Shown piece by piece: positions 9,020 through 57,700 of a stretch of 64,000 nt of DNA. The stretch is from contig NC_082739.1 of NCBI RefSeq assembly GCF_030144855.1, forward strand, positions 7,254,001 through 7,318,000, in the 5' to 3' direction. The DNA is from Hypanus sabinus. Taxonomy: Eukaryota. Below the pieces are notes generated by a model. The model did not search any database, was not told the DNA's origin, and saw only the letters and a list, made by a program, of their open reading frames with translations. The first letter of the stretch is position 1; each line of letters begins with the position of its first letter. The position numbers were made by a program, and so were the translations under genes.

Positions 9020-9660
9020 AAGTGATTCTGCAGATGCTGTAAATCCAGAGTTACACACACAAGATGCTGGAGGAACTCAGTAGGTCAAGCAACATGGAAA
9101 TGAACGAAGAGTCAATGTTTTGGGCTGAGACTCTTCAGCTGGACTGAAAAGGAAGGGGAAAGATGCCCGAATAAGAAATTGGGAGGAGAGGAAGGAGTAC
9201 ATGCCAGAACATGGTAGGTGAAGCCAGCTGAGAGGGCTGAGAGGAAGAATGAAACAAGAAGCTGGGTGGGTATGGATGCAAAAAGTAAAGAGCTGAAGAA
9301 GGAGGAATCTGATAGGAGAGGAGAGTGGACTGTGGGAGAAAGGGAAGGAGGAGGGGCACCAGGGCAAGGTGATAGGCAGGTAAGAAGAGGTATTGAAGTG
9401 GAGAATTGAAGAAGATGGAAGGGGAGGGCAAAGTTATTGGAAGCTGGAGAAATCAATTTTCATGCCATCAAGTTGGAGGCTACACAAATGGAATATAAGG
9501 TGTTGCTCCTCCAACCTGAGAGTGGCTTCATCGTGTCAAAAGAGGAGGCAGCCATGGAACAACATGTTGAAATAGGAATGGGGATAGGAATTAAAATGGG
9601 GCACTGGAGGGAAGGAGGAGGGAGGTTATTGTATAGAAGTTGGGGGAAGAGGACGCGCTG
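9020..9660 (-). mobile_element. Penelope-like element 3' fragment (GIY-YIG C-terminus, pyrimidine-rich region, degenerate hammerhead, terminal repeat)
   Basis: The minus strand encodes HDEATLRLEEQHLIFHLCSLQLDGMKIDFSSF, typical of a PLE endonuclease end, and has the same terminal block as the other copies. Confidence 0.75.
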
Positions 9661-9957
9661 GCTTAAACTTGTGTGTGTTTCAATAACAGTTTTTAATCCA
9701 CTTTCTATTCAATCAGACAGTCAAACAAACAAAAATTGTCTTGCTGGCACTCATGAGAATTTTAAACTAGAATGCAGTTTTTCACTGTTATGTCAATTTG
9801 TGTGGATTGTGAGTACCTGTACAGACTTCAAAGAGGAAGTTATGTCAGAGCTGCATTACAGCCTTTTGACTTTAGATTTCTCCCCTAACAGAAGGAAAAA
9901 CTTCCTTTTACGTGACGTGCTCTTTAACCTTGGGTCAATTCATGTGTTTTATGATCA

Positions 9958-9963
9958 AATAAA
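9958..9963 (+). terminator. Candidate poly(A) signal of the JAML-like gene
   Basis: AATAAA followed by a U/GU-rich stretch (ttgcttgtattgt), about 1.27 kb after the stop. Confidence 0.35.
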
Positions 9964-10003
9964 TATATTTGAATTGCTTGTATTGTAGACTTTCTGTACA
10001 CAG

Positions 10004-10843: not shown

Positions 10844-12315
10844 ACAGCAAGCTCCTGTAATGAGAAGAAATAGTCTATACCTTACTGTTGCTTGTTCCAC
10901 GATAGGTATTGGCAAGGACACAATAGCAAAACATTTATTATGCTTTAATCCTATCAAATTTCTTCACAAGAATGTTAACTAATGAAATAAAGATGGAGGG
11001 CTATGTAGGAGGGAAAGATGGTTTGATCTTGGAGTAAGTTAGAAGGCTGATTAGAAGTAGGAAGAATTGGATGCCAAAGGGCCTGTGCTGTGTTGTATTG
11101 CTCTATGCTCTATTTTCTATCAAGTTCCACTGGGACAGATGGCTAAAAGCTTGGTCAAAGAGATAAAACATGTCTTAACTGAGGAGAGAGTGGTAGGCAG
11201 ATTGCAGGTTTTGGAAATTCCAGAGAATTGCAGCAGATTGAATTGTGATTGATAAAGTGGATGAAATTGGATGAGTGAAATTATTAAGGAGCATTTGGAG
11301 CAATTATTATGGGAGCTGGTGCAGATGCATAAAGAAAAATTAGAGAGTGACAGGGCCACTGAAGGATTTGAAAACAAGTTAAATATTAAAAATAACACCT
11401 TCCTTAACCATAAGCCAATGTCAGTCAGCATGCAAGGGTCTACGTGAAAGGGAATAGATGAGGCCACAGGACCATAACCCTATTTCCCTGCAATTAACGC
11501 CACAAGATCACTTATACATACCTAAAGGTGTAGAAAGTGTGCCCTAGATTATAATTGGATTTGCAGGTATAGCACTTCCTCAGAGTGGCAGTAGATGTGT
11601 GTGCGTCCACATGTCTAAAATGGCATGAATACACAACCTCTTGATTGAGGATGCTCTCCACAAGGCCTTTAATAACATTTCCCAGTAGCCTCCCCCCCCT
11701 CAAAAGATCAGATGTAGCACCACTACTCTCAATTACATTGGTGCTGTTGCAGTCAGATTCCTAATTTAACAAAGTCAATGTAAACCTGCCATCAGAATTT
11801 TATTTTACAAATAATGGCAGAAGTGAGAGTAGAGGTGTACAGAGAAGAATAAGATTGTACTTATAGAAAAGGAAATGATTCTGCAAAAATAAAATAGCAG
11901 AAGTCATAGCTGACAAGTCATCATATATACCTGACTGGTGACTGGATCATGTTGGGGCACTATTCAATATTAAGTGTGTAAATTGTTTTGTGAAAGAGGA
12001 CATTAGTGATTTTATTGATCTTATTAATAGTGAATGTAATCTAGATGCATTAGGTTTAACCTTGATTTCATCTGATCCATTATTAATGATAATTGAATCC
12101 ATTATGAGTCAATGTGATGACCATCAAATAAAGGAACCAAGTCAGGCAGCATCTGTAGAAAGAAAAACAGACAGTGTGTCAGTCTGCGACCCTTCATCAG
12201 AACTGGGAAAGAGAGAGATGTGAGTAGGTTTTCAGTAGGAAGGAAGGTAAAACAGGAGTCTGTGATAGGAAGAGTCAAGATGGGACAGTGTTCAGCACAT
12301 TAAGCCACTGGGCCT

Positions 12316-13002: not shown

Positions 13003-13805
13003 AAGCCACTGGGCCTATGAAATGGGTTGTTAGTGATAAGGTCAATAAGAAAAGCACACCACTGTATAAACTAGGCGGCATCTGTGGGGCACACAAAATG
13101 CTGGAGAAACTCAATAGGTCAGACAGTATCTATGGAAAGGAATAGACAGTCAATGTTTTGGGCCAAAACCCCTCATCTGGATGGAACAGGAGCAGTTAAT
13201 ATTTCAGATGAAGAACCCTTCACCAGACCAGACAAAGAGAGTCATTATGGGTAGCAGCCAGAAATGTGGGTAAAAAGAAGGGGATTTCTCAGGTAGGTTG
13301 AACATGTTTGGCCAATGGATAAAATACCAGGGATGTACAATTTGTGGCTGATGAGGCTCTGGCATACAGAGACATGTTCAACAGACCAGACAATACACAA
13401 AGTGAAAAAGAAAGAAAGCAATCACTGTGGAACTAGTTCTTATTTAGATGGGGTGGGGGTAGTGGGGTGGGAAGAATGTTATCAAAAGTCAGAGCTCAAT
13501 ATCAAGTCCAGGATGTAAAGGAAAGGTGTTAAACTGGAAAGATGCAGAAAATAAACAAGGATTTTGCCAGGACTTGAGTTATAGGGGATGTTGGACTGCC
13601 CAGGACTTTATTCCTGGGAACATAAGGGATTGAGAGGTGACTAAAGTGTATAAAATTGTGTGGGGTATCAATAGGGTGAATGCACTCAGTTTTTCCCCCC
13701 CAGAGTTTGAGAATCAAGAACTAGAGGGCATAAATCGAAGGTAAGAGGGGATAGATTTAATAGGAAGTGGAAGGCCAACTTTTTTTTTCCACAGAGGGGA
13801 GATAT

Positions 13806-14663: not shown

Positions 14664-15104
14664 TCAGAGAATGGGAACTTGGGGAGAATAAAATGGGATT
14701 AGTGTAGGAGTGGTATAAGTGGTTGAGTGATAGATAGTCTATCTGGACATGTTTGTCCAGAGAATGCCCAATCACCTTAGCTTCTCCAGCAATCTGGATG
14801 TTCTGGAAAGGTTCTGTGCTGTATGTCTTTGCACTCTATCCAGGAATAAAGAGCAGTTTCTTGAATCGCCTGTTGTGAGCAGTCCGTGGATGGGGAAAGG
14901 TACATTCACACTGATGTTACTGAAATGGCAGATGGAGAAGATGCAAATTGATATGGGAAATAGAACGGTTTGGGCTGGAAACTTGGTAATGAGGAGCAGC
15001 CATTAAAGGGAACAGAGTTAGTCAACACAATACACATAGTCGGCTAAAGACGAGAATATGGGTAGTTATTCATTAACTGTTTAGTAAATAGGGGTATCAA
15101 AATG

Positions 15105-15385
15105 TTGACTGGTCATTTCCCTCCATAGATGCTGCCCAGCCTGCTGAGTTCCTCCAGCATTTTGTGCCAGTGTTGCTCAAGATTTCCAGCATCTGTAGAT
15201 TTTCTCTTGTTTAGTAGTCAATGCGTCCATGCTTTAGCATGTCATTAGACCGAACATCAAAAACATGATCAGAGACGTTTCGGACCGAGCCCCTTCATCA
15301 GACTTGGCCCGAAATGTCGACTGTTCATTTCCCTCTATGGATGCTGCTTGACCTGTTGAGTTCCTCCAGCATTTTTGTGTGCGTT
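15105..15385. mobile_element. Clustered Penelope-like terminal repeats in both orientations; hammerhead core on the minus strand at 15301-15274
   Basis: The minus strand reads CUGAUGA-A-GGGGCUCGGUCC-GAAA-CGUC. Helix I partner is lost at the inversion junction. Confidence 0.7.
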
Positions 15386-15943
15386 GATAAAAACATAAAT
15401 TGTGTACAGCACGGGTAAAGATGATGCAATGGGAACAAGTCAGAAATACAATATTTATCCGCTACTGCAATTATTTGCATGTCCACAAAGAATTCTGTTT
15501 AAGTTCGACAGGCGTCTGTAAAAGCGCAAGGAGGTTTTGATAGAATTAATAGGCGAAGGAGATGGAAGATGGAAACACTGTGGGTAGTGGTAGTGGTAGT
15601 GGCGGGTGGCGGGGTAGGGTAGCTGAGAGGATTCCAGGGAGCGAGGAGAGAAAGCAAATATGAAATAGGCTTCCCAGGCAAGAAGAACCAGCTATCTTCA
15701 GTGAGCTGGGAGGAGGGATTATAAACGAATATATAAAAATAAACTTTGAATGGAAAATAAGTTTGTGTATGTCTTATCTTTATAATGTATTAAACATGAT
15801 ACAGTAATAGTCCCTTCAGCCGCACCCTACATTTAACCCTTTCATTCTTCCCCTCCCGTGTAATTGTGCACATTCTGGCACATACCGATGCTGGTACAGT
15901 TTAAGTAGTTAATTTGTTAGTTTTTTTTCGCACACTCAAGAGC

Positions 15944-17579: not shown

Positions 17580-17960
17580 GATCTCTACAACCTCCATGGT
17601 CCCCTCCTCTTTCCTTTTCTCCCATGGTTGTTCCTCCTTCCCACTCTCCAGTCCTATCAGAATCCTTCCTTTTCAGGTATTTACCTCCTTCACCTACAAC
17701 TTTCCAACTTCTTACTTCATCCCCTCCCCCGCACCGACTCATCTTCCCCCTCAGTTGCTCTCATCTATCACCTGCCAGCTTGTACTCCTTCCCTCACTCA
17801 ATCTTCTTATTCTCACTTCTTTCCCTTTCCTTTCCAGTTTCGAACCAAAATGTCAATTGTTTATTCCTCTGCATAGGTGCTGCCCGGTCAGTTGAATTTC
17901 TCTAGCAGTTCATGTGTGTCCCTCATGATTTCCAGCATCTGCTGTCTGTGCCCTTGTGTG
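17580..17960 (+). mobile_element. Penelope-like 3' fragment with the hammerhead region deleted
   Basis: Pyrimidine-rich body and terminal block shared with 26990-27470. Confidence 0.65.
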
Positions 17961-18309
17961 TTCTCGTGTTTATGATTTGAAACTTCAAATCTGCCCTCCA
18001 CTGCAAGCACAGTTTTCATCATGCCTTTCGCAGCCTAAACCTGAAGCACTTACCCTAAACCTCTCCATCATCCTTCCTCTTTAACTAAGCTTTTGGTTAT
18101 TTGTCCTTGTATTTCTTTCCGTGGAATTGCGTCAAATATTTGACAAAGCCCCTGGGAATTAATGGAATATGTGCATCACTGGTAAAAATCTATCTGGCCT
18201 ATTAACAGGCAGCTTGTGACTAGGTTTGCCTGGCTATCCAATTAATCAATTAGATTTATAAATAACTTGATGAGGTAAAAACAAGTCACTGTAAATTGGT
18301 TCACTCTTT

Positions 18310-19445: not shown

Positions 19446-21166
19446 TTTACAATGCCTAGTTAACCTACCGAACCGTATGGAAAGCAGAGCACTCGGAGAA
19501 TACCCATGCTGTCACAGGGAGAATGTACAAACTCCTTACAGGCAACAGCAGGAATTGATTATGGGTCACTGGTACTGTAACACTTTGTGCTAACCACTAT
19601 GTTATAGTGCTGCCCTTTCCCAGCATTTGTAGTTTTTTTTTGCTTTCCATCTACTGGTTTGGGAGAGTATTTGCAATTGTAACTCCTATTTGACAGTAAG
19701 CTGTAAAAGGACCTTTCGACATCATAGAGATTTAATGATTAGCTTTATTTGTCACATTGAAACATACAATGAAATGTGTTGTTTTCAGGTGGGAGGCAGC
19801 CCACAAGGGTCGCCATACTTCTGCTACCAACCTAGCATGACCACAACTTATTAACCCTAACCCGTATCTTTGGAATGTGGAAGGAACACCTGCGGTCACA
19901 GGACAACGTACAAACTTCTTACTGACAGTGGTGGGAATTGAACCCTGAATGGTGATCGCTGTCGTGCTAACTGCTATGCTACACTGCCATGCCATCATTA
20001 TGAGCATACAAAGACACGAGAGACCGCACACACTGGAAATTTGGGTCAACACACATTTTCCTACATTGATGCTGCCTGACCCATTGAGTTCCTCCAGCAT
20101 TTTGTTTGTGTTGCTCACTATGAGAATGCCAGCTTCAACAGTAACTCAGACTCAAGAAGAAGACAAACATTGCCTTTTTGTGCAGCTACCCACACAGCAG
20201 AAATTCCAGTGAAGGGTCTTACTGAGAAATGTTGCAATGAAATTTTTCATTGACTGCAGTCAGCCCCAATAATTCAATAAATAAAAGGGAATTTGCACTC
20301 AGAATTGCTAAATCGTCTGCATGCTTTTTCCATATGCTGTCTGGATTATGAAAGTAGAATCTGATTATAATTATCATGGTAATTCAATAAAGATTTGTGA
20401 AAGCTTGATATAAATATTAGGCACTCAGCTATTAATCTAAACTCCTTCCATATAAATTAGTTCCAGTCACTCACTTGGCACTTAATGATATCTCTTTAAC
20501 TATTTCATTCCCAGAAATAATCTAACCAAGTGGTCTTTCTCTATCCCTCAATGATTCCAGCATGGAAATTAACTGATCTTTTGACTTCTCTGTCACTCAC
20601 AATATTTTTCCTCTGGGGACTAATCTATTCTATTGATGTCTCCATGACAGTCTTCCATTCCCTCCCAGAAATCATCAGATCTATTGATCTCTCTCCTTCA
20701 CCCTCAGTAACTTCTAAGCCATACTAATTAATCTATTGATACCTCTCTGACTTTCATTTACACACCAGACCTCCCTACGTCTCTCCTCCCCGGAAATACT
20801 CTAAATAGTACTTAAATAATAAATATAATCAATAATAAAACTATAGCAACAATCTTAAGCAGAAGCATAAAGGGCTAGGAGTTCTCTGCAGCATCAATAG
20901 AGAGCAAACTGGTTAAAGTTCTGTGGAAGAATACCTTCAATATATTCTGATCTTATCAGCTCTCTCTAACACTCATCATTTCCCTCCCAGAATTAAATTA
21001 CTGGTATCACTCCAAACCTCAATATTGTACCTCTTGTGGAACAATCTTTCCAATCAAGAGTGGGAATCCATTTCCTTACCCAGTTTTGATTTCTCACAGT
21101 CCATTCAACATACTCACCCTCTAAGGGAATGAACCTAGCCCAGGCTCATACACCCACATTTGGCTG

Positions 21167-23735: not shown

Positions 23736-25609
23736 ACTTATAATAGATGGTAACAACTCATTTACAAGGTACCTTGGGAATAATAGATGGCAAAGTTGAC
23801 TTCCATTCATCTCTTTACATTTATAAACTACCTTCATCATAGTAAAAAATACCCCAAACCTCTTTACAAGAATAAAATTGCATAAAGAACTGAATGCCTA
23901 CAGAAAGATGAAAACAACGGTTACAAGAGCAGTTAGAGGCTGAGTATGTTATGATGAGTGATACAAATCCTTACTCCTGGAGTCTTGCTATCTTTCATGA
24001 TGAGCAAGTCAAAATTGTGTGCGAATGCACTCCACTTCTTTGATGAAGTCCATTTCCAAACACATTCAAGAAACTTGATACAATCCAGAGGAAAATAGCC
24101 CACTTGCTTGCCAACCCATTCACCATTCTGAACTTCCACACCTCTGGGCAGTGTACGTGCTATCTAAATGTGCAATCTAATAACTTCAACTGCACTTCCC
24201 AAACATGTAACCTTTACAACAAGAGCAGCAGGTGCATGAGAATGGCATCATCTCCTAGTGGCCCACCACTAATTTGGAATTGTGTTGTTGACTCTGTACT
24301 AGCATTGTATCCATGTCTGTATTTCCTGCTTATCAGGCCTGTGGGATAATTGTCACTATACTACCACCAGTGGTTCAGGAAGTCAATTTATCCCCACACT
24401 CTCAAGGACAATTTGGAACGGTCTGTAAATGTTGGGGATGCAGTGGCACCCACCACCAATGGAAGGAACAATGGTATCAGTAAGTGGTCACCAAGTTGTT
24501 CACAGGTTGATTTTTAATCAATTCTTTAAGAGTGCAGAAAATGAAAGGGAAATAGACAGACTGACAGAGAATTTTCTGGAAATATTCTAGAGCAAAGCCA
24601 TGATAACCAAGGGTAGGGTCATCAATGCTTGAATTATTAAAATTACTGCAAAGGACAGAAGTGAAGGAATGTGAAGGATGTCTTCAAATCACCCTGGGGG
24701 ATTTCTTGACTAGCTCTGGCTCCATAATGGGGCCAGCCACTATCTAGCTGCAGCCCAGTTAGTCCACACTCAGTCACCACTATCTGAGAGGAGAAGCTAT
24801 TGACAGTGATATCAGTCTTGATGCAAGGTCTCAACTCGAAGTGTCAACAATTCCTTTCCTCACACTGTTGCTGCTCAAACTTTGAGTTCCTCTATCAGAT
24901 TATCTGGTGCTTTTATGTGGCACCATCTTACTAGAGTCTTCTCACCAGTACACAGTTCGAGTTCCACTCAATCTTCTGAATTCCAGACCTCTCTTACCTT
25001 CACCAATGGACGAATCAAAGAACTGTATACCATAGGTGAAAATGAGAGTGACTGTCCTTGATATCAACTGTGGCATCAAGGACCCTTGATAAAACTGGCC
25101 AGTAGGAACCAAAGGAATAATGACTGATGGTTGGAATTGCACTTTTCCTGAATAGAAAATGTGGTTAATAATTCTAGCCCCAAGAATACTTCAGCAAGAC
25201 TTTCTCATGCCCTACACCCAACTAGTATCTGCTGCTTCTGAAAATAATCTTCTTCATTACTGGCCTTCTTATCATAAATTCGGCAGTGGGGATATTCCCT
25301 GATAAATGCATAATGTTCAGTTTCATTCACAATCAGTCAGCAAAAGAGCATAATATTGAATGTGGGAAGAAAGGCTATCACAGACAAGAGAGATTCAGAT
25401 TCACATTTATTTATCACATGTACATCGAAACATACAGTGAAATGCATTGTTTACATCAATGACCATCCACAGTTCACAGCCATTCCAAACACTGAATTCA
25501 TCAACATCCTGGCATCCAACTTCACCAGCCACATAAATATGGTACATATAAGAGTAGGTCAAAGCACTGGTAATCCATGGTGAGTCATTCTCTTCCTGAC
25601 TCCCTAAAG

Positions 25610-26989: not shown

Positions 26990-27470
26990 CAACCTCTATG
27001 CCTGTGTCCTGCACTTGGGTTCTCCTCAGTCACTCCGTGCAACATGAATATTGATTTCTCTATAATCTCTCCCCTCTCCCTCATCTCTCTTTTTCCATTT
27101 CCCATTCTGGATCCACTCTTACCCCCTTTCTTCTCACCTACCCATCAGCTCCCTCTGCTGCCCATTCTCCTTCCTTTTCTCCCAAAGTCCACTCTCCTCT
27201 TCTGTCGAGTTCCTTCTTCAGCCTTTACCCTTTACATCTATCATCTCCCAATTTCTCACTTCATTCCCCACCTTCCCCCTTACCTGGTTCCACCTATTAC
27301 CTGCCAGTTTGTACTCTTTCCCCTCCCCCCACCTTCTTTTTCTGGCTTCATCCCCCTTCCTTGCCAGTTCTGATGAACGGCCGGCCCGAAACATTGACAG
27401 TTCATCCCCCCCCCCATAGGTGCTGCCTGACTTCCTAAGTTCCTCCAGCATTTTGTGTGTCTTGCAATTA
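26990..27470 (+). mobile_element. Penelope-like 3' fragment with hammerhead core at 27365-27400
   Basis: Degenerate GIY-YIG tail (..MNIDFS), pyrimidine-rich body, CAGUU-CUGAUGA-ACGGCCGGCCC-GAAA-CAUU-GACAG, terminal block. Confidence 0.75.
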
Positions 27471-29884: not shown

Positions 29885-32800
29885 AGGGGAGACATTAGAT
29901 ATTGCAGGTGCCCTGAATTTGGAACAACAATCTGCTGGAAGAACTCAGCAGGTTGAGCAGCATTCATAGGAAGGAGATAAATTGTTGATGCTTCAGGTCC
30001 AGACCTACATCACGATAGAGCAGAGAGAGGAGGTATCTAGTATAGAGTGGTGAGGCGAGTGAAGGGACAAAGATGATTGACAGACTGTGAGGAAGAGGGT
30101 TGAATGAAGGGAAGATGAAACCAGCTAGAAGATAGGGAGGGGTGTGGTTGGGAGACAGGTGGATGGGTGGTAATGAGAACAGAAGGGGAAAAAGAGGAGA
30201 AGTGGGCAGAAGTTGAGGGGTGGGAGGAGGGTTAAGGTAGTGACAACTGCTGGAGGGAGATAAACAGACTTGAAGGCGAGCAGAGGGAGGGGCAGAGTTG
30301 CTTTGACCTCCCTCCCTTCTTCTCCACTTCTGCCAAGCTCAGTTGGATCCTACAGACAGCCTCACTTCCCTCGTTTTCATTTCTCCACGTACTCCTGCCC
30401 CAGTCTCTTCTTCCAAGCTGCCTGCCTTCTTTGACTCTCACACCTTCACTCCACTACCATGACCCCAAATTTTGCTCCAACTCTCACTCTTCCACTTTAG
30501 CCATTTGCCTCTCCTTGCACCCCAGTCTCATTCCACCACACTTCATTTGCCTCCCTCCCTCCTATTCTCATGACCTTCATTGCACTCACTCCCTCCATCT
30601 ACCTCTCATATTGATGTTCTCTCTTCTATGGGAATAGAGTCATAGAAACCTGCAACATGGAAACAGGACCTTCAGCCAGCTTAGTGCCATGCTAACCATC
30701 AGTCACCCACTTAAACAAGTTCTACATTAATCCCAATCTTTATTCATTTCAGATTTCTCCAGATTCTACCACTCACCTGTGTACTAGGAGTAATTTACAG
30801 CAGCTAGTTGACCTACCATCCTGTATGTCTTCATGACGTGAGCAGAATGGTAGTGTGGCAGTTAGCTTAGCCCTATTACTATTCAATTCCGTTGCTGTCT
30901 GCAAAGAGTGTACATTCTCCCCATGGCCTTGTTTGGCTTTACTTCCAGGTGCTCTGGTTTCCTCCCATATTCCAAAGGCATACAATTTAGTAGCTGTTAG
31001 GTTGTATTCTGGAGCTATGGAATATACCAAATATTAATTTCCACAGCAACTAGTCTTCAGATCTGAAAGTGGATTGTAGATTGAGTTTAAAATGCAGATT
31101 AGAACAATGATCTTCCTGGAGCAGCAGGCTGGGGTTGATTGCAAACCAGGAAACAGCTATTCACCTGAGATGTCTGCATATGCATGAATGCAACTCGGAG
31201 ACAAGGGTGACTGACACTCATTTGGGATGTGTAGGTGTGAAGTTCTAGGTGTTTGAAATGATCTGCAATGCAAAGGAAGCATTACGAATGCATTGTAAGT
31301 ATAGAATTGTCCTGCTGTTACCTTTGATCTTTAGCATATAAAATGTCATGTAATATTGGATCAGAGAGCCACTTCCAAGAGTGTCTTCAGAATGATGTCT
31401 GCTTGTTTTTGCTGAATAAAAGACTTCTATTTCACCAGCTTCTGTGTCTCACCGGTAACTTTGTTCACAGTCACGACAGTCCGTTAATTAGTTACATGGG
31501 TGTAATTGGGTGGCATGGGCTTGTTGAGCCAGAAGGGCCTGTTACCGTGCTTTGTCCCTAAACGAATAAAATATGAACTGGAAACTCACGCACATAGAGA
31601 GAACATGCAGATTCCACTCAGATAAGCACTCAAGGTCAGAACTGAATCCAGGTCTCCATCGCGGTCAGGCACTGGCTCCACTAGTGTGCCATTGTACTAC
31701 CCTAACAATTCACCCTATCGTATTCACAAACTCATTCATTTTAGACCTATTCCCTCTTTCTCTAAGCTATACAGACCGGATCTCTACACTGTTGCTCATA
31801 GGATCCTTGGGTAAATCTAAGGACTGACCTGATGGAGATCTTGTTGATTATGAGTGAGTTGGATAAAGTTGACTGAGAGATTTTTTGGTGATTTGGAGTG
31901 GAAACAGTCTGAGTTTATCCTGGAATCTCTGGTTATTTATGAAGATTCCTGAAACTCTGGGATCTTTCTATGCAATCTAGGTTACCTGCTCCCAAGTCAT
32001 ATGCTCCCAAGCACACTGGCCTGTGCTTAAGACCAGTAAACCAGAGGTTCCAAATCATATCTTGAGCATTTCGTACTGGAGGCAGTGAGTGCACTGCTTT
32101 TGGCAATGCTCCCAGATATGTCGGTGGCCCGAAATATAAGGGAATCTCTGATAAATATAATTCAGAACAATTCATTATCCAGCAATCAGTGAGAATGTGG
32201 AACCTGCGCCCACAGGAAATAATCCTGATGATCAGCGGACTCAGAGGAAGCTGGATAACAGTGCAGAGGAACCAGACACTCCATGACCTGTACATGCTTA
32301 TGTCTGGAATATCATAGCTCACTCTCCTGCAGGCCTTAAAAAAACTGACTCAGTGCAGCTGATGACTTGCTTCCTGATCATTTTTTTCCACATTTTACAT
32401 TCATATGAAGAACCTATAATTTTGCATTTCCAACCTTAACCCTATTTCAGGTGCACTCATATATTTGCACAATGTTCCTTCTTGATCCAATCTGGTTATT
32501 GTTATATATTTTACTCTCACCTCTCTTATCTACCTAATTTTCTAACTTTTACAGCTCTCAAAAACCCACTCACTTCCACAGTGCCCCCAGTCTGAAGCTC
32601 CATCTACAGTGCTAGACACCTAAGCAACATACATAATATACAAACACAAGAAATCCTGCAGATGCTGGAGACCTTGAGCAATGCACACAAAATGCTGGAT
32701 GAAGACTCTTCATGGAGGGAAATAAACAGTCAATGTTCCAGGCCAAGACCCTTCCTCAGGACTGGAAAGGAAAGGGGCAGAAGCCCGAATAAGAAGATGG

Positions 32801-33560
32801 GGGAGGGGAAGAAAACACATACAAGCTGGCAGGTGATAGGTGAGACTAGCTGAGAGTGAAAGTGGATGGGAAGGGGAGAGGGGATGATGTGAGAATCTGC
32901 AATTTGATAGGTGAAAGAGTTAAAGGGCTGAAGAAGAAGAAATCTGATACTATACAATGGACAGTATACCATGGAAGAAATGGAAAGAGGAGGGGCTGAA
33001 TACTGATTGCAGCTAAACTCAACGGAAATCTGGCTGAACAGAACAACTCATTCACCAGTCTTGATCCTTTGAAACCCACTTCACCCAAAGCAATCTTTGA
33101 GCTATGCATTCAGTTGTTCATCTCATTGACCACAGTTTGCATGTGGTTCAGGTAGTAATCAAGTGATTAACACCTTTGCAGTCTGCATGCTCTCTCAGGA
33201 GATCCTCTTTCTTAAGACTGGCAATATCACTGATACCTCAATGGATCACTCCAGCTGGTTCTTTCCCTTCCCATTCCTCCTTCTCCACATATTCTTAATC
33301 CCATCACAGGACAGGCAACTCAGCCTTTGAAACTCTCACTTGCAGTTACAGAGAATACCATCTATTCCTTTGACTATTAAAATCCCTGTGGTTATTATAT
33401 TCCTTTGCTCATTCCCTGCCCTGCTACAACACACACACAAAATGCTGGAGGAACTCAGTGGGTCAGGCAGCATCTATGGAGGGAAATAAACAGCCAATGT
33501 TTCAGGCCAAGTCCTTTCATCAGGTGCTATATAAGGTTTCCAGCATCTGCAGAATCTCTT
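29885..33560 (-). mobile_element. Three Penelope-like fragments (about 29885-30320, 32640-32990, 33420-33560) among SINE and CR1 debris
   Basis: Shared terminal block. Hammerhead-like cores at 32727-32765 (GAAA changed to GGAA) and 33491-33524 (core intact, helix I absent). Confidence 0.65.
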
Positions 33561-39448: not shown

Positions 39449-40015
39449 GGAGGAGCTGTAAAGACAGGATGCGATTCGGTTAAATATTTTGTGAGGAATG
39501 GATCCTGTTCTAATGCAGCATCCCCTGGGATAGGCCGAACTTAGCATCATTCAGTGAGAGTCCTGCAGAGTCAGCATTCCAGCTCGCTGCATTGGCCTCT
39601 GATTGATGCAGCGATTGGAGATATAGATTTTTTTTAAAGTGCAGCAATATGCAAATAGAACTGCAAAGGGAAAAGGCACAACTGCAAGATGACAGAAGCA
39701 GAAAAACTGGTGCAGTTCAGGGAGCTGAATGAAACCTGCATCATCAGGGCTGGTCATACCAGAGGCCTTTTCAAAAAGGGTGGTCTACCAACCAGATCCC
39801 AGACATTTCTGCTTCTCTCTCCTACTTAGAAATATTAAGTTTATTATTAACTTGAGTATTTAAGTATTACTACTACCATTAGGCAGGAGGTACAGGAGCC
39901 TTAGGTCCCACGCCACCAGGTTCATGAACAGTTATTACTCTTCAACCATCAGGCTCCTGAACCAGCGAGGATAACTTTACTCACCTCAATTCTGAACTGA
40001 ATCCACAACCTAAGG

Positions 40016-40225
40016 AACACACACAAAATGCTGGTGGAATGCAGCAGGCCAAGCAGCATCTATAGGGAGAAGTACAGTCGACATTTTGGGTCCTACTGAT
40101 GAAGGGTCTCGGCCCGAAACGTCAACAGTGCTTCTCCTTACCTGGCCTGCTGCATTCCACCAGCATTTTGTGTGTGTTGCTTGAATTTCCAGCATCTGCA
40201 GATTTCCTCGTGTTTGCGTTTTTAT
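40016..40225. mobile_element. Fold-back Penelope-derived insertion with 15-bp TSD, inside a Rex/Babar-type LINE tail (39875-40445)
   Basis: TSD ATCCACAACCTAAGG at 40001-40015 and 40226-40240; the element's left arm is the reverse complement of its right part. Confidence 0.85.
40096..40123 (+). ncRNA. Minimal hammerhead ribozyme core (best-preserved copy)
   Basis: CUGAUGA 40096-40102, extra A, helix II GGGU-CUCG-GCCC, GAAA 40116-40119, palindromic ACGU, cleavage triplet GUC 40121-40123. The helix I 5' strand is disrupted by the inversion junction. Confidence 0.7.
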
Positions 40226-40446
40226 ATCCACAACCTAAGGACTCACTTTCAAGGTCTATACAACTCATGTTCTCAGTATTAATTATTTATTTTTAAAAAA
40301 TTTATTATTAGCTCTATTTGTCCTCTTTTGCACATTGGATGTTTGTCAGTCTTTGTTATGTATAGATTTTCATAAATTCTATTTATTTATTTTCCTGTAA
40401 ATGCCTATAAGAAAATGAATCTCAGGGTAATAAATGCTAACATATA

Positions 40447-44875: not shown

Positions 44876-44884
44876 TCTGTGCTG

Positions 44885-50189: not shown

Positions 50190-50620
50190 TCGTGCCGGAA
50201 AAAGTAGACTCAGAAAATGGTGGAGGAATTCCGCGGGTCAGCATCTATGGAGGAAAATATTGTATGGAGTCAACATTTTGGGCCAAGACCCTTCATCAGG
50301 ACTGGAAATGAAGGAGGCAGAAACCAGAATCAGAACATGTGGGAGGAGGGAGATACAAGGTGGCAAGTAACAAGTGAGACCAGGTGAAAGGGAAGATGGA
50401 TAGGAGGAAGAGAGGGGATGATGTGAGCTGATAGGTGGAAGAGGTAAAAGGCTGAAGAAGAAGGAATCTGATTGGAGAGTATGGTGGACCATGGAAGAAA
50501 GGGAAGGAGGAGGGGAATCAGAGGGAAGTGATGGACATGAAAGTGGGAGAAGAAAAGCGAAGGACAAGAGGGTAACCAGGTTGGGAAGTGTCCCCATCTG
50601 CAGAATCTCCTGTGTCGAGT
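50190..50620 (-). mobile_element. Penelope-like fragment in SCN2B intron 3 (hammerhead with GAAA changed to AAAA)
   Basis: The minus strand reads CAGUC-CUGAUGA-A-GGGUCUUGGCCC-AAAA-UGUU-GACUC. Confidence 0.7.
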
Positions 50621-50655
50621 GGTAGACAGTTGCTAACAGGTGCTCTCTCTTTCAG

Positions 50656-50855
50656 TGGCTCCTGAGCGTGACTCCACCGTCGCTGTAATCATTGGCGCCT
50701 CCGTTGGTGGATTCCTTGCTGTCGTCATTCTGATTTTAGTAATAGTGAAGTGCGTGAGGAGGAAAAAGAAACAAGATAACCAATCCGAAGATCAGAAGAC
50801 TGAAGAAGAAGGAAAAACGGACGGGGAAGGCAATCAGGAAGAAGAGGAAAAGTAA
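50656..50855 (+). CDS. SCN2B: SCN2B exon 4 (transmembrane helix and cytoplasmic tail)
   Basis: GCTAAC branch motif, CAG acceptor at 50653-55, phase 1. Encodes VAPERDSTVAVIIGASVGGFLAVVILILVIVKCVRRKKKQDNQSEDQKTEEEGKTDGEGNQEEEEK*. The four exons total 657 nt = 218 aa + stop. Confidence 0.97.
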
Positions 50856-51074
50856 GGGCCATGGAGTCAGCTGGGTCGCAGGCTCAACAGCCTCTCCAAG
50901 TATTGTATTTTATTTATTTTATTGGATGTAGGGTGGTTGCTAAGGTTAATGTTTACCGCCCATCCCTAATTGCTCTTGAGAAGGTGGTGGTGAGCTACCC
51001 TGCTTAACCACCTCAGTCCTTCTGATGACACCCTCTTGGGCATTGAGGTCCTGAATCTGGACCCACCAACAACG

Positions 51075-51370
51075 TAACACACACAAAATGTTGGAGGAGC
51101 TCAACAGGTCAGGCAGTTTCTATGGAAACGAAAAAACCATCAACATTTCAGGTTGAGACCCTTCATCAGGACTGGAAAGGAAGGGGGAGCTGCCAGAGTA
51201 AGAAGTTGGAGGGAGGCATCAAACTCCACTTCCTTTCTGGTCCTGATGAAGGTTCTCAGACCAATATGTTGATGTTTTATTTATTTCATGGACGCTGCCT
51301 GACCTGCTGAGTCACTCCAGCATTTTTTGTGTACTGCTCTGGATTTCCAGCACCTGCAGAATCTCTCAAG
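51075..51370. mobile_element. Inverted pair of Penelope-like ends; minus-strand hammerhead core intact at 51137-51174
   Basis: Minus strand CAGUC-CUGAUGA-A-GGGUCUCAACCU-GAAA-UGUU-GAUGG; the plus-strand copy at 51243 lacks GAAA. Confidence 0.7.
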
Positions 51371-54300
51371 TCAATGACAAAATGGTGCTCTGTTTCCAAG
51401 TCAGGACAGAGTAGAACCACAAGGGGAATCAGCAGATTATGTTATTCCCAGGTCTTTGCTACCTTTGTCCTTGATAGTAAAGTTCCCATGTTTAAGAAGT
51501 CTTGTTAGAGCAACCTAGCTAACCACAGGGCAGCATGGTAGCATAGCAGTCAGCGGATTGCTTTATAGCACTTCCAATCAGGGTTTAGTTTCCGCCGTTG
51601 CCTGTAAGGAGTTCATATGCTCTCACTGTGACTGCATGGGTTTCCTCCAGGTGCTCCGGTTTCCTCCCACAGTCCAAGCGGTTAAGGTTAGTGAGTTGTT
51701 GGCGCCAGAAGTGTGGCGACACTTGTGTGCTGCCCAGCCCAATTTCCGCTGATTTGATTTGATGAAAACGATGCATTTCACTGTCTGTTTCAATGTACAT
51801 GTGACAAATAAAGCTAATCTTTTAGCTGAGCAAATGCAGGGCACTTGTGTCAATGTTACACTCTAAGCTATAATCTTCAAGCAGGGGCCAGAATGAGCAT
51901 TTCAGATGGGGGATGAGAAGCTAATGCAACCGGCTGGTTTGTCTTGGATGATGCCAAACTTCTTACTGGAATCTTGGGTGGTTGTAAAAGACCCCAGAAC
52001 ATTACTTTAATGCAAAGAGAAGATCCCCCAATACAGACCAACATACTGCATATTCCTCAAACAATATGACCAAGAAGCAAATGATCTGATTGTTATTATC
52101 ATGCTGCTCGTAGGTGGTTGGTTTGAAAGATACATTTTTAATGCTGTGGCACTGAGCATTTTTAATGCTGTTTTATAATTGATCTTTTCATTGAAAACCC
52201 AACATACATAAACGAGAAACAGTAGATGTACTATCCTTAGATTTTCAGAATGCATTTGATAAGACATTGCAGCAAACATCAGTAAAGAAAATAGAAGCGC
52301 ATAGCGCAGGAGGTGACAGATTAAGGGGTGGCACTGTAGACTTGCAGTTAGCACAATGCTTTACGGCATTATCTGTAAGATCATGGTTTGATTCCCACCA
52401 TGGTCTTATCCGGGTGCTCTGTTTTCCCCCCACTTTCCAGAAGATGTATTGTTAGGAATGGCGAGTTGTGGGCATGCTATGTTGGCACCAGAAACATGGT
52501 GACACTTGTGGGCTGCCTGGCACAGTCCTCACTGATTCAATTTGAAACAAACAACACATTTCACTGCATGTTTTGATGTACATGTGACAAATAAAGCTAA
52601 TCATTATCTAATCTTTATCTTTCAATTCTTCTCCTTCTTCTTCTTCTTAAGCCCATCACCCTTTTTAGATCATAGGCTACTGACAGCAACTTGCCAGAGT
52701 CCTCTGTCCTGGACCAATCTCTCAAATTGTCGCTAAGTGTAGTCCATCTTCTTAGATCCTTTCTCTCCCAGGATGAGGTCTTTGAAGCTTCTGCTGGCAT
52801 TTCTGTAGCTCTGAGTTTTTACAGGGTGGGGTTGCTAGCCTCGTCCAACCCTCCTCCTTTCACAGCCGAGCTTGGGACCATCCATGGTGGACTTTATCTT
52901 CAGGTTGGTGCAGGTAGAAGATTGCTTGGTTAACACAAAATGGAGTCTTGGCATAAATAGGTCTTTTTTTCTATTTGACAAGATGTAATGAGTGCCAAGG
53001 GATTGCTGCTGGGATTTTAATTTTTGTGATTTATCCAAGTGATTTTGATGAGGGCACAAAAGTTACAGTTGCTAACCTTCCTAACAACACTTGGATAGGT
53101 AGGAAAGTAAGCTGTGGAGAGGACATGGGGAGATTTCAAGGAATATAGATGGATTAAATGAGGCAATGATCTGGCAAATGAAGTTTTATAAAGCAAAGAA
53201 TAAAAAAAGAACTATATTATATAAATGGTTGCAGAGGGATCTAGTCTGCGATTCAGCAAGCATGTAGGTACTGTAAGCATTTGTTTTTTTGTTTGTTTTT
53301 TTTTATAGAGATACAGCACGGAACAGGCCCTTCTAGCCCTTCAAGCTGCTGCACCCAGCAACCCCCCCACCCTCCGATTTAATCCTGGCCTATCACAGGA
53401 CAGTTTACAATGACCAATTAAGCCAGCAATCAGTAGATCTTTGGACTGTGGGAGAAAGCCAGTGCACCTGAAGGAAACCCACTCGGTCGCGGTGGAAAAT
53501 ATGCAAACTCTTTACAGGCAGCGGTGGGAATTGAACCCAGGTTACTGGTACTGTAAAGCGTTGTGCTCACCACTATGCTACCGTCCCACCCCAAAAATTG
53601 GGAAAACTCTCAGAATGAAATAGTTTATTGTTTTTGGAACTGAATACAAAAGTTGGGAGATTCTGCTTCAGTTATGTCCGACTTTAAGAAGACTACATCT
53701 GGAGTACTGTGCAAAACATTGGATTTGTTATAGAAAGAAGAATATTAATATGTTAGAAACTGTTCTGAGCAGGTAAACTGGACAAAGACCTGGAATGGGT
53801 GGATCTGCTTATGAGGAAAGTTTGGATGGAATAAGATTGTTTCAGTCAATTCCTCTCTAATTCTTCTAAACTCGAGAAGTGGTTGCTGGGGTTTAGTAGA
53901 AATAAAGAGGAATTCACTGAACCAAAAATAATATTGAAAGGTCTTGACAGAGTGAATGTGAAGATATTTTCTCTTTATTTTTTATTATTATTTATTTAGA
54001 GATACAGCACATAAAAGGCCCTTCCGGCCCAAAGTGCTGCACAGCCCAGCAACCCACCTATTTAACCCTAACCTAATCACAGGACAATTTACAATGACCA
54101 ATTAACCTGCTATTCAGTACGTCTTCGGACTGTGGGAGGAAATCAGAGCACCCAGAGGAAACCCACATGTTCACGGGAGGACGCACAAACTCCTTACAGG
54201 CGGTGTCGGAATTGAACTCCAAACTCGGACACTGCAACTGAACTCCGAACTCAGAAGCCCCTAGCTGTAATATTGCTGCGCTAACTGCTATGCTACGATG

Positions 54301-54722
54301 GTGCCCCTTATGGGAGCATCTGGGACTAGAAGTCAAAGGTTAGCAATAAGAGTCACCCATTGAATACGGTATAATGCAACTGTTTTACTCATAAATGATG
54401 ATCATAAATCTTTGGACCTTTTTCTGACAGGTTGGTGGAAACAAGTCAATTGCTACTGTTAAGGCAGAGGAAGACAGACACTTCATAAGCAAAGAGGTGG
54501 AAATTACCATAGGTAGATGAGAGTGCAGAACTGAGGATACAATCAGTTCAGCCATAATTTTATTAACACATGGAGTGAGTTTGAGGACCAAGTTCTATAT
54601 TGGTGCAAAAGCTTGTTCACTCCTTCTTTGTAAAACAATGCGGAAGCAAGAAACCCAATTGTTTCTGGCATTGAGATTCCAATTCATTCTAGCTTTGTTC
54701 TAACTGAGTTTTGTGTTTGTAG

Positions 54723-54732
54723 GCAGCACTAG
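54723..54732 (+). CDS. SCN2B: Candidate SCN2B exon 5 (adds QH* if the donor at 50852 is used), followed by a putative 3' UTR
   Basis: TTCTAAC branch point at 54698-54704, T-rich tract, TAG|G acceptor. AA + G CAG CAC TAG is in frame. A largely TE-poor stretch follows, with AATAAA at 55848 and 55908. Confidence 0.5.
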
Positions 54733-57700
54733 GGACAGTGAAACATGGCTGAGGATGACCTGCCTCTGTTGACGACTGTTGGTCTTCATGCTTCACGGGA
54801 TGTTACCGATTCTCTTCCATGCTGCTTTACATTAAACACGAGTGCTGATGTGCCCACCTTCTGCTGCGCTGCAAAACTGCGTTCGATCCATCGTGCATGC
54901 CGTCAACCTCCAAACTGCGCGCAAGTGATACCACTGAACATGGCAGTATTCAACGCAAGCACTAGCTTCACACCATCAGCGTAAATACAATGCTAATTAT
55001 CATGCCAAGTGCCATATGAGTGTGGTGAATTATAACTAGGGTGTTAATTGTGCACGCTTTAACTGAGCGTCAGTGAGTAGGTGGCACATTACAAGTAAAA
55101 ATAATATACACCCTGCTTCGTTATTCATTCAGGGGAACGTAAATATAGTTGTTTTGCTTATTCACTGTTTGGGAGGTTAGCATTGCCAGCAAGGCCAGTA
55201 TTTATTACCCTTCTCTAATTGCCCTTGAGAAGTTTTTGGTGACCTGCTTTCATGAACCACTATTGTCCTTCTGCTGTAGTTGATCCCGCGCTGTTGTTGA
55301 GTAGGAATCCCACCAGAGAAGGTGTTACCATCTTCATATTCCCACTTGACTCTGTCCCTCAGTAGTGAGTAAATCACATGTGATAGAAAAAAACTAATGT
55401 TGCAACCAATTCCGTACATTTTCCAGCAGGCAGGTTCAATTAAAATTGCTGAAGGCGTATGTATGTGTTTGTTTTTAAGAAAAGAATAGCACCTCAAAAT
55501 ATCTATTGTAATGATTTGGAAGACTCCAATTTCTTGGTAGGGTGTGCCTAAGGAATCCTGAATATATCACAGGATACTTCTTGTCCAATTTATCCAAGAT
55601 CAGGGGAATTCTCAAAATGGAGGCTTTGACAGGACCATTGTGAAATATTTTCTTGTGTCTTTCCCCCAAGGAAGGAGGTAGTTACAACACATCTGCCAAT
55701 CAGTGGCAGGGAACATTCCAGACACATTGGTTTTGTACAGCACAGAACGGCTTACTTTTTAAATCCAATTCCTCTGTGCTAAATGTGAGGTAATTTTGTG
55801 ATTAGAAATTGAGCTTACTATGGATCGGAAGAGGATTTATTTTCATAAATAAAAGAAAAACTTTATACATATGAGTACAAGCTGAAGTCCCACACTGCCA
55901 ACAATGGAATAAACATGTTATTCTAAACACTGGGGCTGACAAGAGGTTTCCTGGTAAGGTTCCTAACCTTCTCAAAAATAACCTGAAATTTTCAAATTGA
56001 GGGTATCTATCCTGGGCAATATTTCCAATAACCCAGGGAACTGGTGATGTAGGTCACTGACGTGGGCAACAAACACTGAGATAAAGCCCTGTGAATAATG
56101 GCTTGGCTCACAGTCATGGGAGTTAGAATCAGGCACTTATTAAAAGACCTTGGTGGCCTGGTGCCTCACATCACCAGTGATCTGGGTTCATTTGTAATCT
56201 CTGGTGCTGTTTTTGGGGAGTTTACATGCTCTCCCTGTGAATTCATGGGCTTCCTCTGGGTGTTCCGGCTTCCTTCCACTTCACAATGACGTGTGGGTGA
56301 GTAGGTTAATTAGCCAGAGTATTATGTGGATGTGTGGAGCCTGGGGAGAGATGATAGGAAAGTTGAGAGAATAAAATGGGATTCGCATAGGATTAATGTA
56401 TATGTTTGACAGCACAGACTTGTAGGGTTGAAGACCCTGTTTCTGTGCTATATACCTCTCACTCCTTGATTCTATGACTTTCCCAATCTGAGCCTCAGAA
56501 CTAAGCTAGGGAAACTGTTCAGAGTTATCGCTCTCTGAGAGCCACAACTCTCTGGGAGCGTGGTAGGTTCTTTATCAGAGGAATGGAGTAAGAAGAGAAG
56601 GGAGGGAGACTTGGAAGCTATAGCTTGGGAAAGAGAAAGAGGCCAGTTGGGGTAAAAGAGAGAAGGGTGGCAGGACCTTGGGGAGGTGAATCTGTGGTAA
56701 TTGGTGCCACAGACAGTTCTGGAGGCCAAGTCATTGAGTATACTTAAAGCAGAGTTGATAGTTTCTTGATTAGTAAGTGTGTCAAAGATTACGGGGAGAA
56801 AGCCTGAGTATGGGGTTGAAAGGGATAATAGATCAGCCATGATGGAATAGCAGGGAAAACTCAATGGGCTGAATGGCTTAACTCTTTCCTATGTCTTATG
56901 AGGATGTGAGTTTGTAGGGACTGGAAAGTGGACAATGAGAATTTAAAGACTGCAGATGCTGGAAATCTGAAAGGAAATCAAAAACTCAGCAGGTCAGGAA
57001 AAAGAATCCGAGTTACTGTTTTAGGCCAGAGGCTTTTCATAAAATTCTGTTTTTTTAGGATCAGAAGGAACAGGATGGTGAGTGAGAATAGGCCCCAGCG
57101 GGGAAGGCAGGAAGGGGGAGGAGTGAAACCCAATGATCTTCCCATGGATAAACAGTGAAGGGTAAGATGTGAAGAAAGCAGGAACAAAGATTCTGAGCTG
57201 GTTGAAATAAGAGGGCAATGAGGAGCTGGGTCCTTTAACCAAGATCTATTGAATCACAGGGCAGTGCACTACATATGGCTATCAAGGTGTAGACTAAAAC
57301 ACAATTTCAAAGTGAATGAGTTAATATTTGATTATTTTATAAATTATCATGAAATCGAAGATTACATTATCAGGTATTGTATGTAATCAAATGTTGTGAT
57401 CAGAATGTATTGTGATCAAACCAGATATGGCAGCTCTGTGTTTCTGACCTCCACTGGGGTTTTCATACAACCTAGCAACCTTCTGCTTTTCCACGGCAAC
57501 ATCCTATCCTTTATGTCAAGCCAGCATGTCTAGATTAACACTGATGAGGTCCATTACTAGTCTATGGGCCTTTCACCTTCCTTGCACTGCCCTACCTGGA
57601 TTGTTCCTTCAAGGTTTAATGCTTTAACTAATGCTTAAGCTTTCAACGACTAAGTTGCTTTGCTTAAGTCCCTGTTATTAGTCTTCCTTGTCCAAGGACC

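What the first reader, a model, noticed from the sequence alone, without database searches (positions are those of the whole stretch)
9020..57240. Dense family of Penelope-derived ends carrying a minimal hammerhead ribozyme
Seen: at least 13 copies of one terminal block (about 9114, 13148, 15274, 17850, 20209, 24830, 27365, 29985, 32727, 33491, 40096, 50271, 51137, 51243, 57000; several very degenerate). Their consensus CAGUC-CUGAUGA-A-GGGU(CUCG)GCCC-GAAA-CGUC-GACUG gives a 5-bp helix I, the CUGANGA and GAAA core, a 4-bp helix II, a GUC cleavage triplet, and a helix III reduced to the palindrome ACGU. Established: Penelope-like elements carry such minimal hammerheads, which are thought to cleave as dimers, and an extra A after A9 occurs in a natural viroid hammerhead (CChMVd). 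Three copies are attached to GIY-YIG C-terminal remnants (about 9450-9540, 27010-27060, 63050-63100). Inference: this is a very abundant, mostly non-autonomous ribozyme-bearing retroelement family, at roughly one copy per 4-5 kb, including in the pre-mRNA of a sodium-channel gene. I do not know whether it has been described in this lineage.
Basis: partly seen in the sequence, partly recalled or inferred. Interest (0 to 1): 0.8.

Follow-up and report, generated by a model that had tools for sequence, protein, structure and literature searches.

The report
Decayed Penelope retrotransposon tails with hammerhead relics
The window is peppered with old, broken end-pieces of a Penelope-like jumping gene of sharks and rays. 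Their ancestral sequence carried the small "minimal hammerhead" self-cutting RNA motif already known from such elements, so this is a correct spotting of an ordinary, already described kind of repeat.

Summary

That motif has every hallmark of the minimal type-I hammerhead of metazoan Penelope-like elements (PLEs), as described by Cervera and de la Pena 2014. These are the CUGAUGA and GAAA boxes, one extra base after A9, a G10.1-C11.1 pair, no helix III loop and a palindromic ACGU.

Two copies run on into the C-terminal end of a GIY-YIG ORF, which is 84% identical to a devil-ray RT/GIY-YIG fragment. The third ORF remnant, near 63 kb, has no recognisable hammerhead block.

The copies also show the known PLE insertion signature:
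- 5' truncation
- inverted twin copies
- an optional tail of about 39 bp
- one clean 16-bp target-site duplication

All copies are fossils, 14-45% diverged with strong CpG decay. Only 5 of 13 keep the invariant core, and none keeps core, helix I, helix II and ACGU together. The two best cores are locked in -113 and -120 kcal/mol fold-back hairpins. There is no covariation, as expected for neutral decay.

Three copies lie in SCN2B introns. The only sense-oriented one of these has a broken core.

Verdict: a new member of a known kind, of low interest. Other agents of this scan reached the same reading on other windows of this genome.

The parts
9029..9625 (-). Longest copy. ORF C-terminal remnant at 9437-9535, with an upstream piece reaching 9625. 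Then about 290 nt of 3' UTR, a decayed hammerhead at about 9106-9146, and a 3' part with tail.
   Evidence: (84% identity to P0009 C-terminus)
12138..12220 (-). CUGAUGA is kept and GAAA has become GACA.
13088..13190 (-). Decayed copy without tail (core CAGAUGA, G12 changed to A).
15098..15221 (+). 5'-truncated copy that starts inside the hammerhead (from the GAAA CGUC region) and has the tail.
15265..15395 (.). Inverted junction. On the minus strand, an intact 28-nt core lies at 15274-15301 (2 mismatches) but lacks helix I. On the plus strand, a sense arm at 15297-15395 is truncated at GGCCC.
17760..17991 (+). Copy with tail. CUGAUGA and half of helix II are deleted.
20054..20240 (+). 3' part only at 20054-20149. 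A very degenerate hammerhead-like stretch lies near 20205-20240 and is not significant.
24800..24900 (+). Strongly decayed copy (core UUGAUGC).
27043..27460 (+). Copy reaching the last codons of the ORF (..NMNIDFS). Hammerhead at 27365-27405 with helix II broken. No tail.
29905..30030 (-). Decayed copy with tail.
32650..32888 (-). Copy with 5/5 helix I and 4/4 helix II, but A13 changed to G and 16.2 changed to A. Has the tail.
33428..33565 (-). Sense arm starting at CUGAUGA, without tail. It is joined to a short inverted piece that consists of the tail only.
40001..40241 (+). Youngest insertion, a fold-back of two inverted tails. The left arm is antisense and reaches 63 nt past the cut site, with no tail. 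The right arm runs from CUGAUGA to 102 nt past the cut site, with tail. The perfect 28-nt core is at 40096-40123. The 16-bp TSD ATCCACAACCTAAGGA lies at 40001-40016 and 40226-40241.
50190..50422 (-). Copy in an SCN2B intron, antisense to the gene. G12 changed to A.
51063..51376 (.). Head-to-head inverted pair in the last SCN2B intron. 51128-51178(-) is the only copy passing a relaxed min-HHR descriptor with helix I at 4/5. 51234-51284(+) has GAAA changed to AAUA.
56934..57125 (-). Very degenerate copy with tail and a 16-nt insertion in the core.
62922..63089 (+). GIY-YIG C-terminal remnant of an older or different PLE copy. No recognisable hammerhead block follows it.

Best explanation
The blocks are the last 100-600 bp of insertions of one old Penelope-like retrotransposon family of cartilaginous fishes. 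This family has a C-terminal GIY-YIG endonuclease and is probably Neptune-like.

How the copies arose:
- Each copy was made by target-primed reverse transcription that started near the 3' end of the element RNA and usually stopped early. Mostly tails are therefore left.
- Two alternative start points, about 39 nt apart, explain why copies come with or without a tail.
- PLE enzymes cut and extend both DNA strands, so many insertions are twin inverted copies that meet head-to-head (fold-backs).

About 64 nt upstream of the proximal 3' end, the ancestral element carried the known PLE minimal type-I hammerhead. It has a 5-bp helix I, CUGAUGA, one bulged A, a 4-bp helix II, GAAA and a loop-less ACGU in place of helix III. 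It is therefore expected to be active only as a dimer or with help from the element's protein.

In active elements the motif is thought to process tandem pLTR transcripts, though its role is unproven. In this window every copy is a neutrally decaying fossil, and none is expected to cleave. The anatomy, family membership and decay are shown here. The insertion mechanism and ribozyme function are inferred from the PLE literature.
For: Family and statistics.

Hammerhead features: alignment A2 and the core table, and the descriptor scan giving 2 hits against 0.01 in shuffles. All four non-descriptor hallmarks named in PMC4209133 are present.

Link to the PLE ORF:
- 9437-9535(-) is 84% identical to the C-terminus of P0009 from Mobula hypostoma. 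P0009 carries the RT YIDD motif, a CX4CX2C linker and a GIY-YIG domain (Pfam E 4.6e-4).
- The 9114 and 27365 copies are collinear from the ORF end to the 3' end.

PLE insertion signature, as described in PMC8557442 and PMC11167929:
- 5' truncation at varied points.
- Inverted partners at 40096, 15274, 33491 and 51137/51243.
- Tail present in 8 pieces and absent in at least 7.
- In the 40096 insertion the two arms end 63 and 102 nt past the cut site, a difference of 39 nt, and it has a 16-bp TSD.

Decay: K2P 0.16-0.67. The CG sites of GCCCGAAACGUCGACUG read TG or CA in most copies.

Elasmobranch host: named hits from a skate, a devil ray and a bamboo shark.
Against: - No Rfam hammerhead model matches, even at E up to 10. 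This is expected for a motif without helix III, but it means membership rests on a hand-made descriptor.
- No covariation was found.
- Nearest-neighbour energies do not favour the double-hammerhead fold: -19.9 kcal/mol against -25.4 for two monomers and -33.7 for an alternative duplex.
- No RT domain of this family lies in the window, so the ORF link rests on about 30-60 C-terminal residues.
- Cleavage was not and could not be tested. All sequencing runs offered are contigs.
Confidence: 0.88

Rival explanations
1. The short fold-back insertions are a separate, self-propagating non-autonomous lineage, not by-products of each insertion. They would be hairpin mini-elements made only of the hammerhead end module and mobilised in trans by PLE enzymes. 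Their template RNA would start exactly at C3 of the hammerhead.
For: In three of the four inverted structures the sense arm begins within 0-1 nt of CUGAUGA (40096, 15274, 33491). The 40096 unit inserted as one piece with a perfect TSD. Unchecked notes of this scan report many TSD-flanked fold-backs with the hammerhead at the apex elsewhere in the genome.
Against: The junctions differ in sequence and in where the antisense arm ends (GGGUCC+UA, GGGCCAAG+U, tail-only+9 nt). This argues for independent events rather than one master. Inverted 5'-truncated partners and cutting of both strands are known PLE behaviour. Three cases are too few for statistics.
Confidence: 0.1
2. The copies are active or exapted ribozymes that cleave host transcripts, for example the SCN2B pre-mRNA, or they form retrozyme-like tandem arrays giving circular RNAs.
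For: Three copies lie in SCN2B introns. The motif is a bona fide hammerhead design.
Against: Of the three intronic copies only 51243 is in the sense orientation, and its GAAA box reads AAUA. No copy has all required parts. The two best cores are sequestered in hairpins of -113 and -120 kcal/mol. There are no head-to-tail tandem arrays. The two same-strand neighbours, 50271 and 51137, are separated by an SCN2B exon. There is no conservation beyond neutral decay.
Confidence: 0.03
3. The repeat is a SINE or MITE unrelated to PLEs, and its resemblance to a hammerhead is chance.
For: Rfam finds no hammerhead. Many copies are short and palindromic.
Against: Two copies are collinear with a GIY-YIG ORF end. 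The motif has features not imposed by any search pattern: the bulged base, G10.1-C11.1 and the ACGU palindrome. The descriptor expectation in shuffles is 0.01.
Confidence: 0.02

Closest known systems
Minimal hammerhead ribozymes (min-HHR) of metazoan Penelope-like elements (Cervera and de la Pena 2014, PMC4209133; dimer cleavage per Lunse et al. 2017 as cited in PMC6765202)
   Same: - Type I topology with the CUGANGA and GAAA boxes.
- An unpaired base between A9 and 10.1, and a G10.1-C11.1 pair.
- No helix III loop, with palindromic 15.2-16.2.
- A helix I of 4-5 bp.
- Located near the 3' end of the element.
- Present in very many dispersed, mostly truncated copies.
   Different: Helix II here is 4 bp, against 6-8 bp in many published families. 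The host is a ray. Elasmobranch families are not specifically described in the papers I could search. All copies here are decayed.
Poseidon PLE of Anolis carolinensis (PAc; Frangieh et al. 2024, PMC11167929)
   Same: The hammerhead lies tens of nucleotides upstream of two alternative reverse-transcription start sites. These sites are 30-40 nt apart and define the optional tail. Both target strands are cut and extended, which fits the twin inverted insertions seen here.
   Different: PAc belongs to the Penelope/Poseidon clade. The closest ORF fragment here has a CX4CX2C linker, which points to Neptune-type elements. In PAc the ORF starts inside the hammerhead. Here the majority sequence has an ATG in CUGAUGA but a stop 21 codons later.
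Non-LTR retrozymes of animals (Cervera and de la Pena 2020, PMC7229834; Li et al. 2026 preprint 10.64898/2026.07.22.740005)
   Same: They are hammerhead-bearing, PLE-related and non-coding. One cartilaginous fish was reported to carry them.
   Different: Retrozymes are head-to-tail tandem arrays with canonical type I hammerheads and give circular RNAs. Here the copies are dispersed single or inverted units with a loop-less minimal motif.

Membership tests
PLE minimal hammerhead (min-HHR) | Catalytic boxes CUGANGA and GAAA at the right spacing around a helix II hairpin | tested here: met
   Present in the alignment majority. The invariant core is intact in 5 of 13 copies. The descriptor gave 2 hits against 0.01 in shuffles.
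PLE minimal hammerhead (min-HHR) | One unpaired nucleotide between A9 and G10.1 | tested here: met
   It is A in 12 of 13 copies and G in one. Listed as a conserved feature in PMC4209133.
PLE minimal hammerhead (min-HHR) | G10.1-C11.1 closing pair of helix II | tested here: met
   GC in 6 copies and GU in 3 of 13. The GU cases fit C-to-T decay at a CpG.
PLE minimal hammerhead (min-HHR) | No helix III loop, with palindromic 15.1-16.1 (ACGU) allowing a dimeric helix III | tested here: met
   ACGU is intact in 40096 and 15274. AUGU or ACAU in the others is consistent with CpG decay.
PLE minimal hammerhead (min-HHR) | Open helix I of 4-6 bp flanking the motif (type I) | tested here: met
   5/5 in 32727 and 4/5 in five other copies. 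Absent in the copies truncated at C3.
PLE minimal hammerhead (min-HHR) | Compensatory changes in helices I and II across family members | tested here: inconclusive
   The covariation score of 0.238 equals the shuffle mean, and 229 of 500 shuffles reach it. Copies of one decaying family cannot show selection. Other families or species are needed.
PLE minimal hammerhead (min-HHR) | Self-cleavage at GUC, as a dimer or with protein | not testable with these tools
   Only assembled contigs were available. Thermodynamics alone do not favour the dimer fold.
Penelope-like element (EN+) | ORF with RT followed by a C-terminal GIY-YIG endonuclease upstream of the block | tested here: met
   Only the C-terminal remnant lies in the window. 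It matches P0009, which has RT YIDD, a CX4CX2C linker and GIY-YIG. DNA collinearity of two copies. No RT of this family lies in the window.
Penelope-like element (EN+) | Frequent 5' truncation, an adjacent inverted 5'-truncated copy, and an optional 30-40 bp tail at one end | tested here: met
   In 40096 the arms differ by a 39-nt tail. Features as described in PMC8557442 and PMC11167929.
Penelope-like element (EN+) | Target-site duplication | tested here: met
   16-bp perfect TSD for 40096. The other copies are too decayed for a clear TSD.
Rfam hammerhead families (types I, II, III, HH9, HH10) | Covariance-model score at or above the gathering threshold | tested here: not met
   No hammerhead hit at gathering, or at E up to 10, on the window or on the 121-nt best copy. 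The motif lacks the helix III hairpin these models expect.
Non-LTR retrozyme | Head-to-tail tandem repeats of hammerhead-bearing units | tested here: not met
   No direct tandem pairs. The neighbours are inverted, or separated by an SCN2B exon.

The most novel reading that the evidence does not exclude
The hammerhead marks a preferred 5' end of the template. Short RNAs that begin exactly at C3 of CUGAUGA and run to the element's 3' end would be copied from both target strands. This would give a distinct, abundant class of TSD-flanked hairpin mini-insertions with the ribozyme core at the apex. It would tie the hammerhead region to transcript start or processing in PLE biology, in a way not yet described.
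Probability: 0.1. Interest if true: 0.4.

Novelty: new member of a known kind. Interest (0 to 1): 0.14.

Why it matters
It matters little beyond annotation. The family should be masked as a PLE with its min-HHR, so that its hairpins are not taken for microRNA precursors. Rfam gave weak miRNA-like hits on them. Its remnants should also not be fused into gene models. A skate 'neuromedin-U receptor 1' model ends in this element's GIY-YIG tail.

The clean 40096 insertion is a tidy natural example of the twin-strand, two-start-site insertion mechanism shown in vitro for the anole PLE. The role of the hammerhead in PLE biology is still open, but these fossil copies cannot settle it.

Tried and rejected
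- Rfam at gathering and at E up to 10 gave no hammerhead, only spurious miRNA-like hits on the fold-backs and on a TG microsatellite.
- My first spaced pattern used the wrong spacing and found only a chance hit.
- Pfam on the window's ORF remnants found nothing.
- A word-based homologue search with the 62.9-kb remnant found nothing.
- DNA around the Mobula and Chiloscyllium ORF fragments could not be fetched because the files were too large. Four other hits were not on record. No cross-species hammerhead comparison was therefore possible.
- No supplement text is held for Cervera 2014, and Lunse 2017 is not held.
- The TSD search found a clear duplication for only one copy.
- The upstream piece 62757-62891 does not match the PLE linker significantly.
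- Read laying could not address cleavage because all runs are contigs.
- I considered and rejected a trans or alternative-register hammerhead between the antisense arm and the core in the fold-backs. Helices I and III do not form, by inspection of the sequence.
Full report

Yes. The core pattern CTGATGAAGGGTNNNNGCCCGAAACGTC gives three hits at up to 3 mismatches, against none in 100 shuffles. They are 40096(+) with 0 mismatches, 15274(-) with 2, and 50272(-) with 3.

An nhmmer profile built from 14 copies finds 20 hits, about 17 loci, with E-values down to 1e-56. Fourteen of the 15 listed positions are hit. The 15th, 20209, is only a very degenerate motif seen by eye. 17850 has a deletion and 57000 an insertion. 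I found extra pieces at 12138-12220(-), 15098-15221(+) and 20054-20149(+).

In the hammerhead-sense alignment (A2) the majority reads ..CCAGTC CTGATGA A GGGTCTCGGCCC GAAA C[A/G]T[T/C] GAC.G. The three CpGs in GCCCGAAACGTCGACTG read TG or CA in most copies.

**2. What is it?**

Two copies continue upstream into the end of an ORF.

- 9437-9535(-) translates to ..DEATLRLEEQHLIFHLCSLQLDGMKIDFSSFQ*.
- A full HMMER scan of 1.84 billion proteins with this 33-residue piece found 8 hits. Most are gene models that end in the same tail.
- A region-restricted search with one of those hits then found proteins named from Rhinoraja longicauda, Mobula hypostoma and Chiloscyllium punctatum.
- The Mobula protein P0009 carries the RT motif ..RYIDD.., a CX4CX2C linker and a GIY-YIG domain (Pfam E 4.6e-4, just under the cut-off). 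Its C-terminus is 84% identical to the window remnant.
- Such a Zn-finger-like linker marks the Neptune and Nematis clades (PMC8557442), so the family is probably Neptune-like. This is an inference.

The 9114 and 27365 copies are collinear over 433 bp, from the last codons of the ORF to the 3' end (70% identity, E 2e-56). The third remnant, 62922-63089(+), aligns to the same C-terminus (E 4e-5). Nothing like the hammerhead block follows it, so only two of the three claimed attachments hold.

The host is an elasmobranch. Other agents' notes call this genome a ray or stingray, and the named hits agree.

**3. Anatomy of the family**

In sense orientation the order is:

- ORF stop
- about 290-310 nt of pyrimidine-rich 3' UTR
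- the hammerhead
- about 64 nt ending in ..CAGCATTTTGTGTGTG
- an optional tail of about 38 nt, ..GATTTCCAGCATCTGCAGAATC..

Eight pieces have the tail and at least seven lack it. 5' ends are scattered: two reach the ORF, several lie in the 3' UTR, three lie at CUGAUGA, and three lie inside or after the hammerhead.

Four loci are inverted structures: 40096, 15274, 33491 and 51137/51243.

The youngest, 40096, is especially clear.

- A perfect 16-bp duplication, ATCCACAACCTAAGGA, lies at 40001-40016 and 40226-40241.
- It flanks two inverted arms whose outer ends are the element's 3' ends.
- The left arm stops 63 nt past the cut site and the right arm 102 nt past it. The arms therefore differ by exactly a 39-nt tail (read).

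This matches published PLE behaviour:

- high 5' truncation
- an adjacent inverted 5'-truncated copy
- a 30-40 bp tail, often at one end only (PMC8557442)
- for the anole element, cutting and extension of both strands, with two internal reverse-transcription start sites separated by the tail (PMC11167929)

**4. The ribozyme**

The motif carries all four hallmarks that Cervera and de la Pena list as emerging beyond their descriptor:

- consensus families within a genome
- G10.1-C11.1
- palindromic 15.2-16.2

The 'extra A' is thus a family trait of PLE min-HHRs and needs no viroid analogy. Rfam hammerhead models do not match even at E up to 10. This is expected without a helix III hairpin.

In this window the motif survives only as a relic. 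Only 5 of 13 alignable copies keep all invariant core bases, and none keeps core, helix I, helix II and ACGU together.

A relaxed descriptor finds two hits, against 0.01 in shuffles:

| Copy | Helix I | Genomic context |
|---|---|---|
| 40096(+) | 2/5 | In a fold-back of -113 kcal/mol; the GGCCCGAAACGUC half pairs with the antisense arm |
| 51169(-) | 4/5 | Pairs end to end with its inverted partner, -120 kcal/mol |

Divergence from the window majority is 14-45% (K2P 0.16-0.67).

Counting pairs on A2 gives 73% paired cells, against 18-42% when the partners are slid. Covariation, however, equals the shuffles (229 of 500). This is the expected outcome for neutrally decaying copies of one ancestor.

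Nearest-neighbour energies do not favour the double hammerhead: -19.9 kcal/mol, against -25.4 for two monomers and -33.7 for an alternative duplex. This is in line with published findings:

- PLE hammerheads cleave poorly in vitro.
- They need a dimeric construct or the element's protein.
- They are dispensable for insertion in vitro.
- They leave no RNA-seq ends at the cut site.

**5. Host gene context**

SCN2B lies on the + strand. Its exons are near 41.3 kb, 49.1 kb, 50654-50851, and from 54723 onward. Contigs of three probable RNA runs join 50851 to 54723 across a GT..AG intron.

- 50271(-) lies in one intron.
- The 51137/51243 pair lies in the last intron.
- Only 51243 is in the sense orientation, and its GAAA box reads AAUA.
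- Whether 40096 is intronic depends on the position of exon 1, which I did not find.

**6. Known or new?**

The kind is fully known: PLE min-HHRs occur in thousands of copies in fishes, coelacanth, amphibians and reptiles (PMC4209133). Penelope elements are annotated in shark genomes (PMC8455134). A 2026 preprint sampled one cartilaginous fish for PLE-derived retrozymes.

I found no paper describing this particular elasmobranch hammerhead family, so it is a new member of a known kind. The scan has noted the same family more than 300 times in this genome, and four follow-up agents reached the same verdict on other windows. I did not treat that as independent evidence.

**7. Residual oddity**

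In three of the four inverted structures the sense arm starts within a base of C3 of CUGAUGA. The junctions differ in detail, so independent events are likelier than a master copy. A genome-wide histogram of truncation points would decide whether the hammerhead marks a preferred template 5' end.

Noticed in passing
window 50851-54723 (+): Contigs of three probable RNA runs from three coded organisms join 50851 to 54723 across a 3871-nt GT..AG intron. SCN2B therefore has a further downstream exon after the exon ending at 50851. This supports another first-stage note on a fifth SCN2B exon.
   Followed up: partly
window 61669-62080: Tandem array of 5.9 copies of a 70-bp unit (96% matches). The same sequence also occurs as a dispersed repeat into which the 40096 element inserted (39880-40016 and 40226 onward).
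   Followed up: partly
window 40096, 15274, 33491: In three inverted insertions the sense arm begins at or within 1 nt of C3 of CUGAUGA. This may be a preferred 5' end or template-switch point.
   Followed up: partly
P0005 (Rhinoraja longicauda 'neuromedin-U receptor 1', residues about 440-499); also P0003, P0004: Public gene models of elasmobranchs end in, or contain, the GIY-YIG C-terminal tail of this PLE family. These are chimeric annotations caused by unmasked element remnants.
   Followed up: partly
window 44730-44900: A TG/TA-rich microsatellite gives weak false miRNA-like Rfam matches (mir-3149, mir-297).
   Followed up: no
window 12376-13020(+), 22271-22900(+), 44879-45968(+), 35190-36026(-): Other retroelement ORF fragments. 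By eye, three look like LINE-type RT pieces and one like an LTR-retrotransposon pol. None was scanned against Pfam.
   Followed up: no
family majority, from CUGAUGA onward: The AUG inside CUGAUGA opens a 21-codon frame (MKGLGPKRRL..) before a stop. In the anole PLE the ORF starts inside the hammerhead. Whether the ray family once did the same, perhaps with an intron, is unknown.
   Followed up: no
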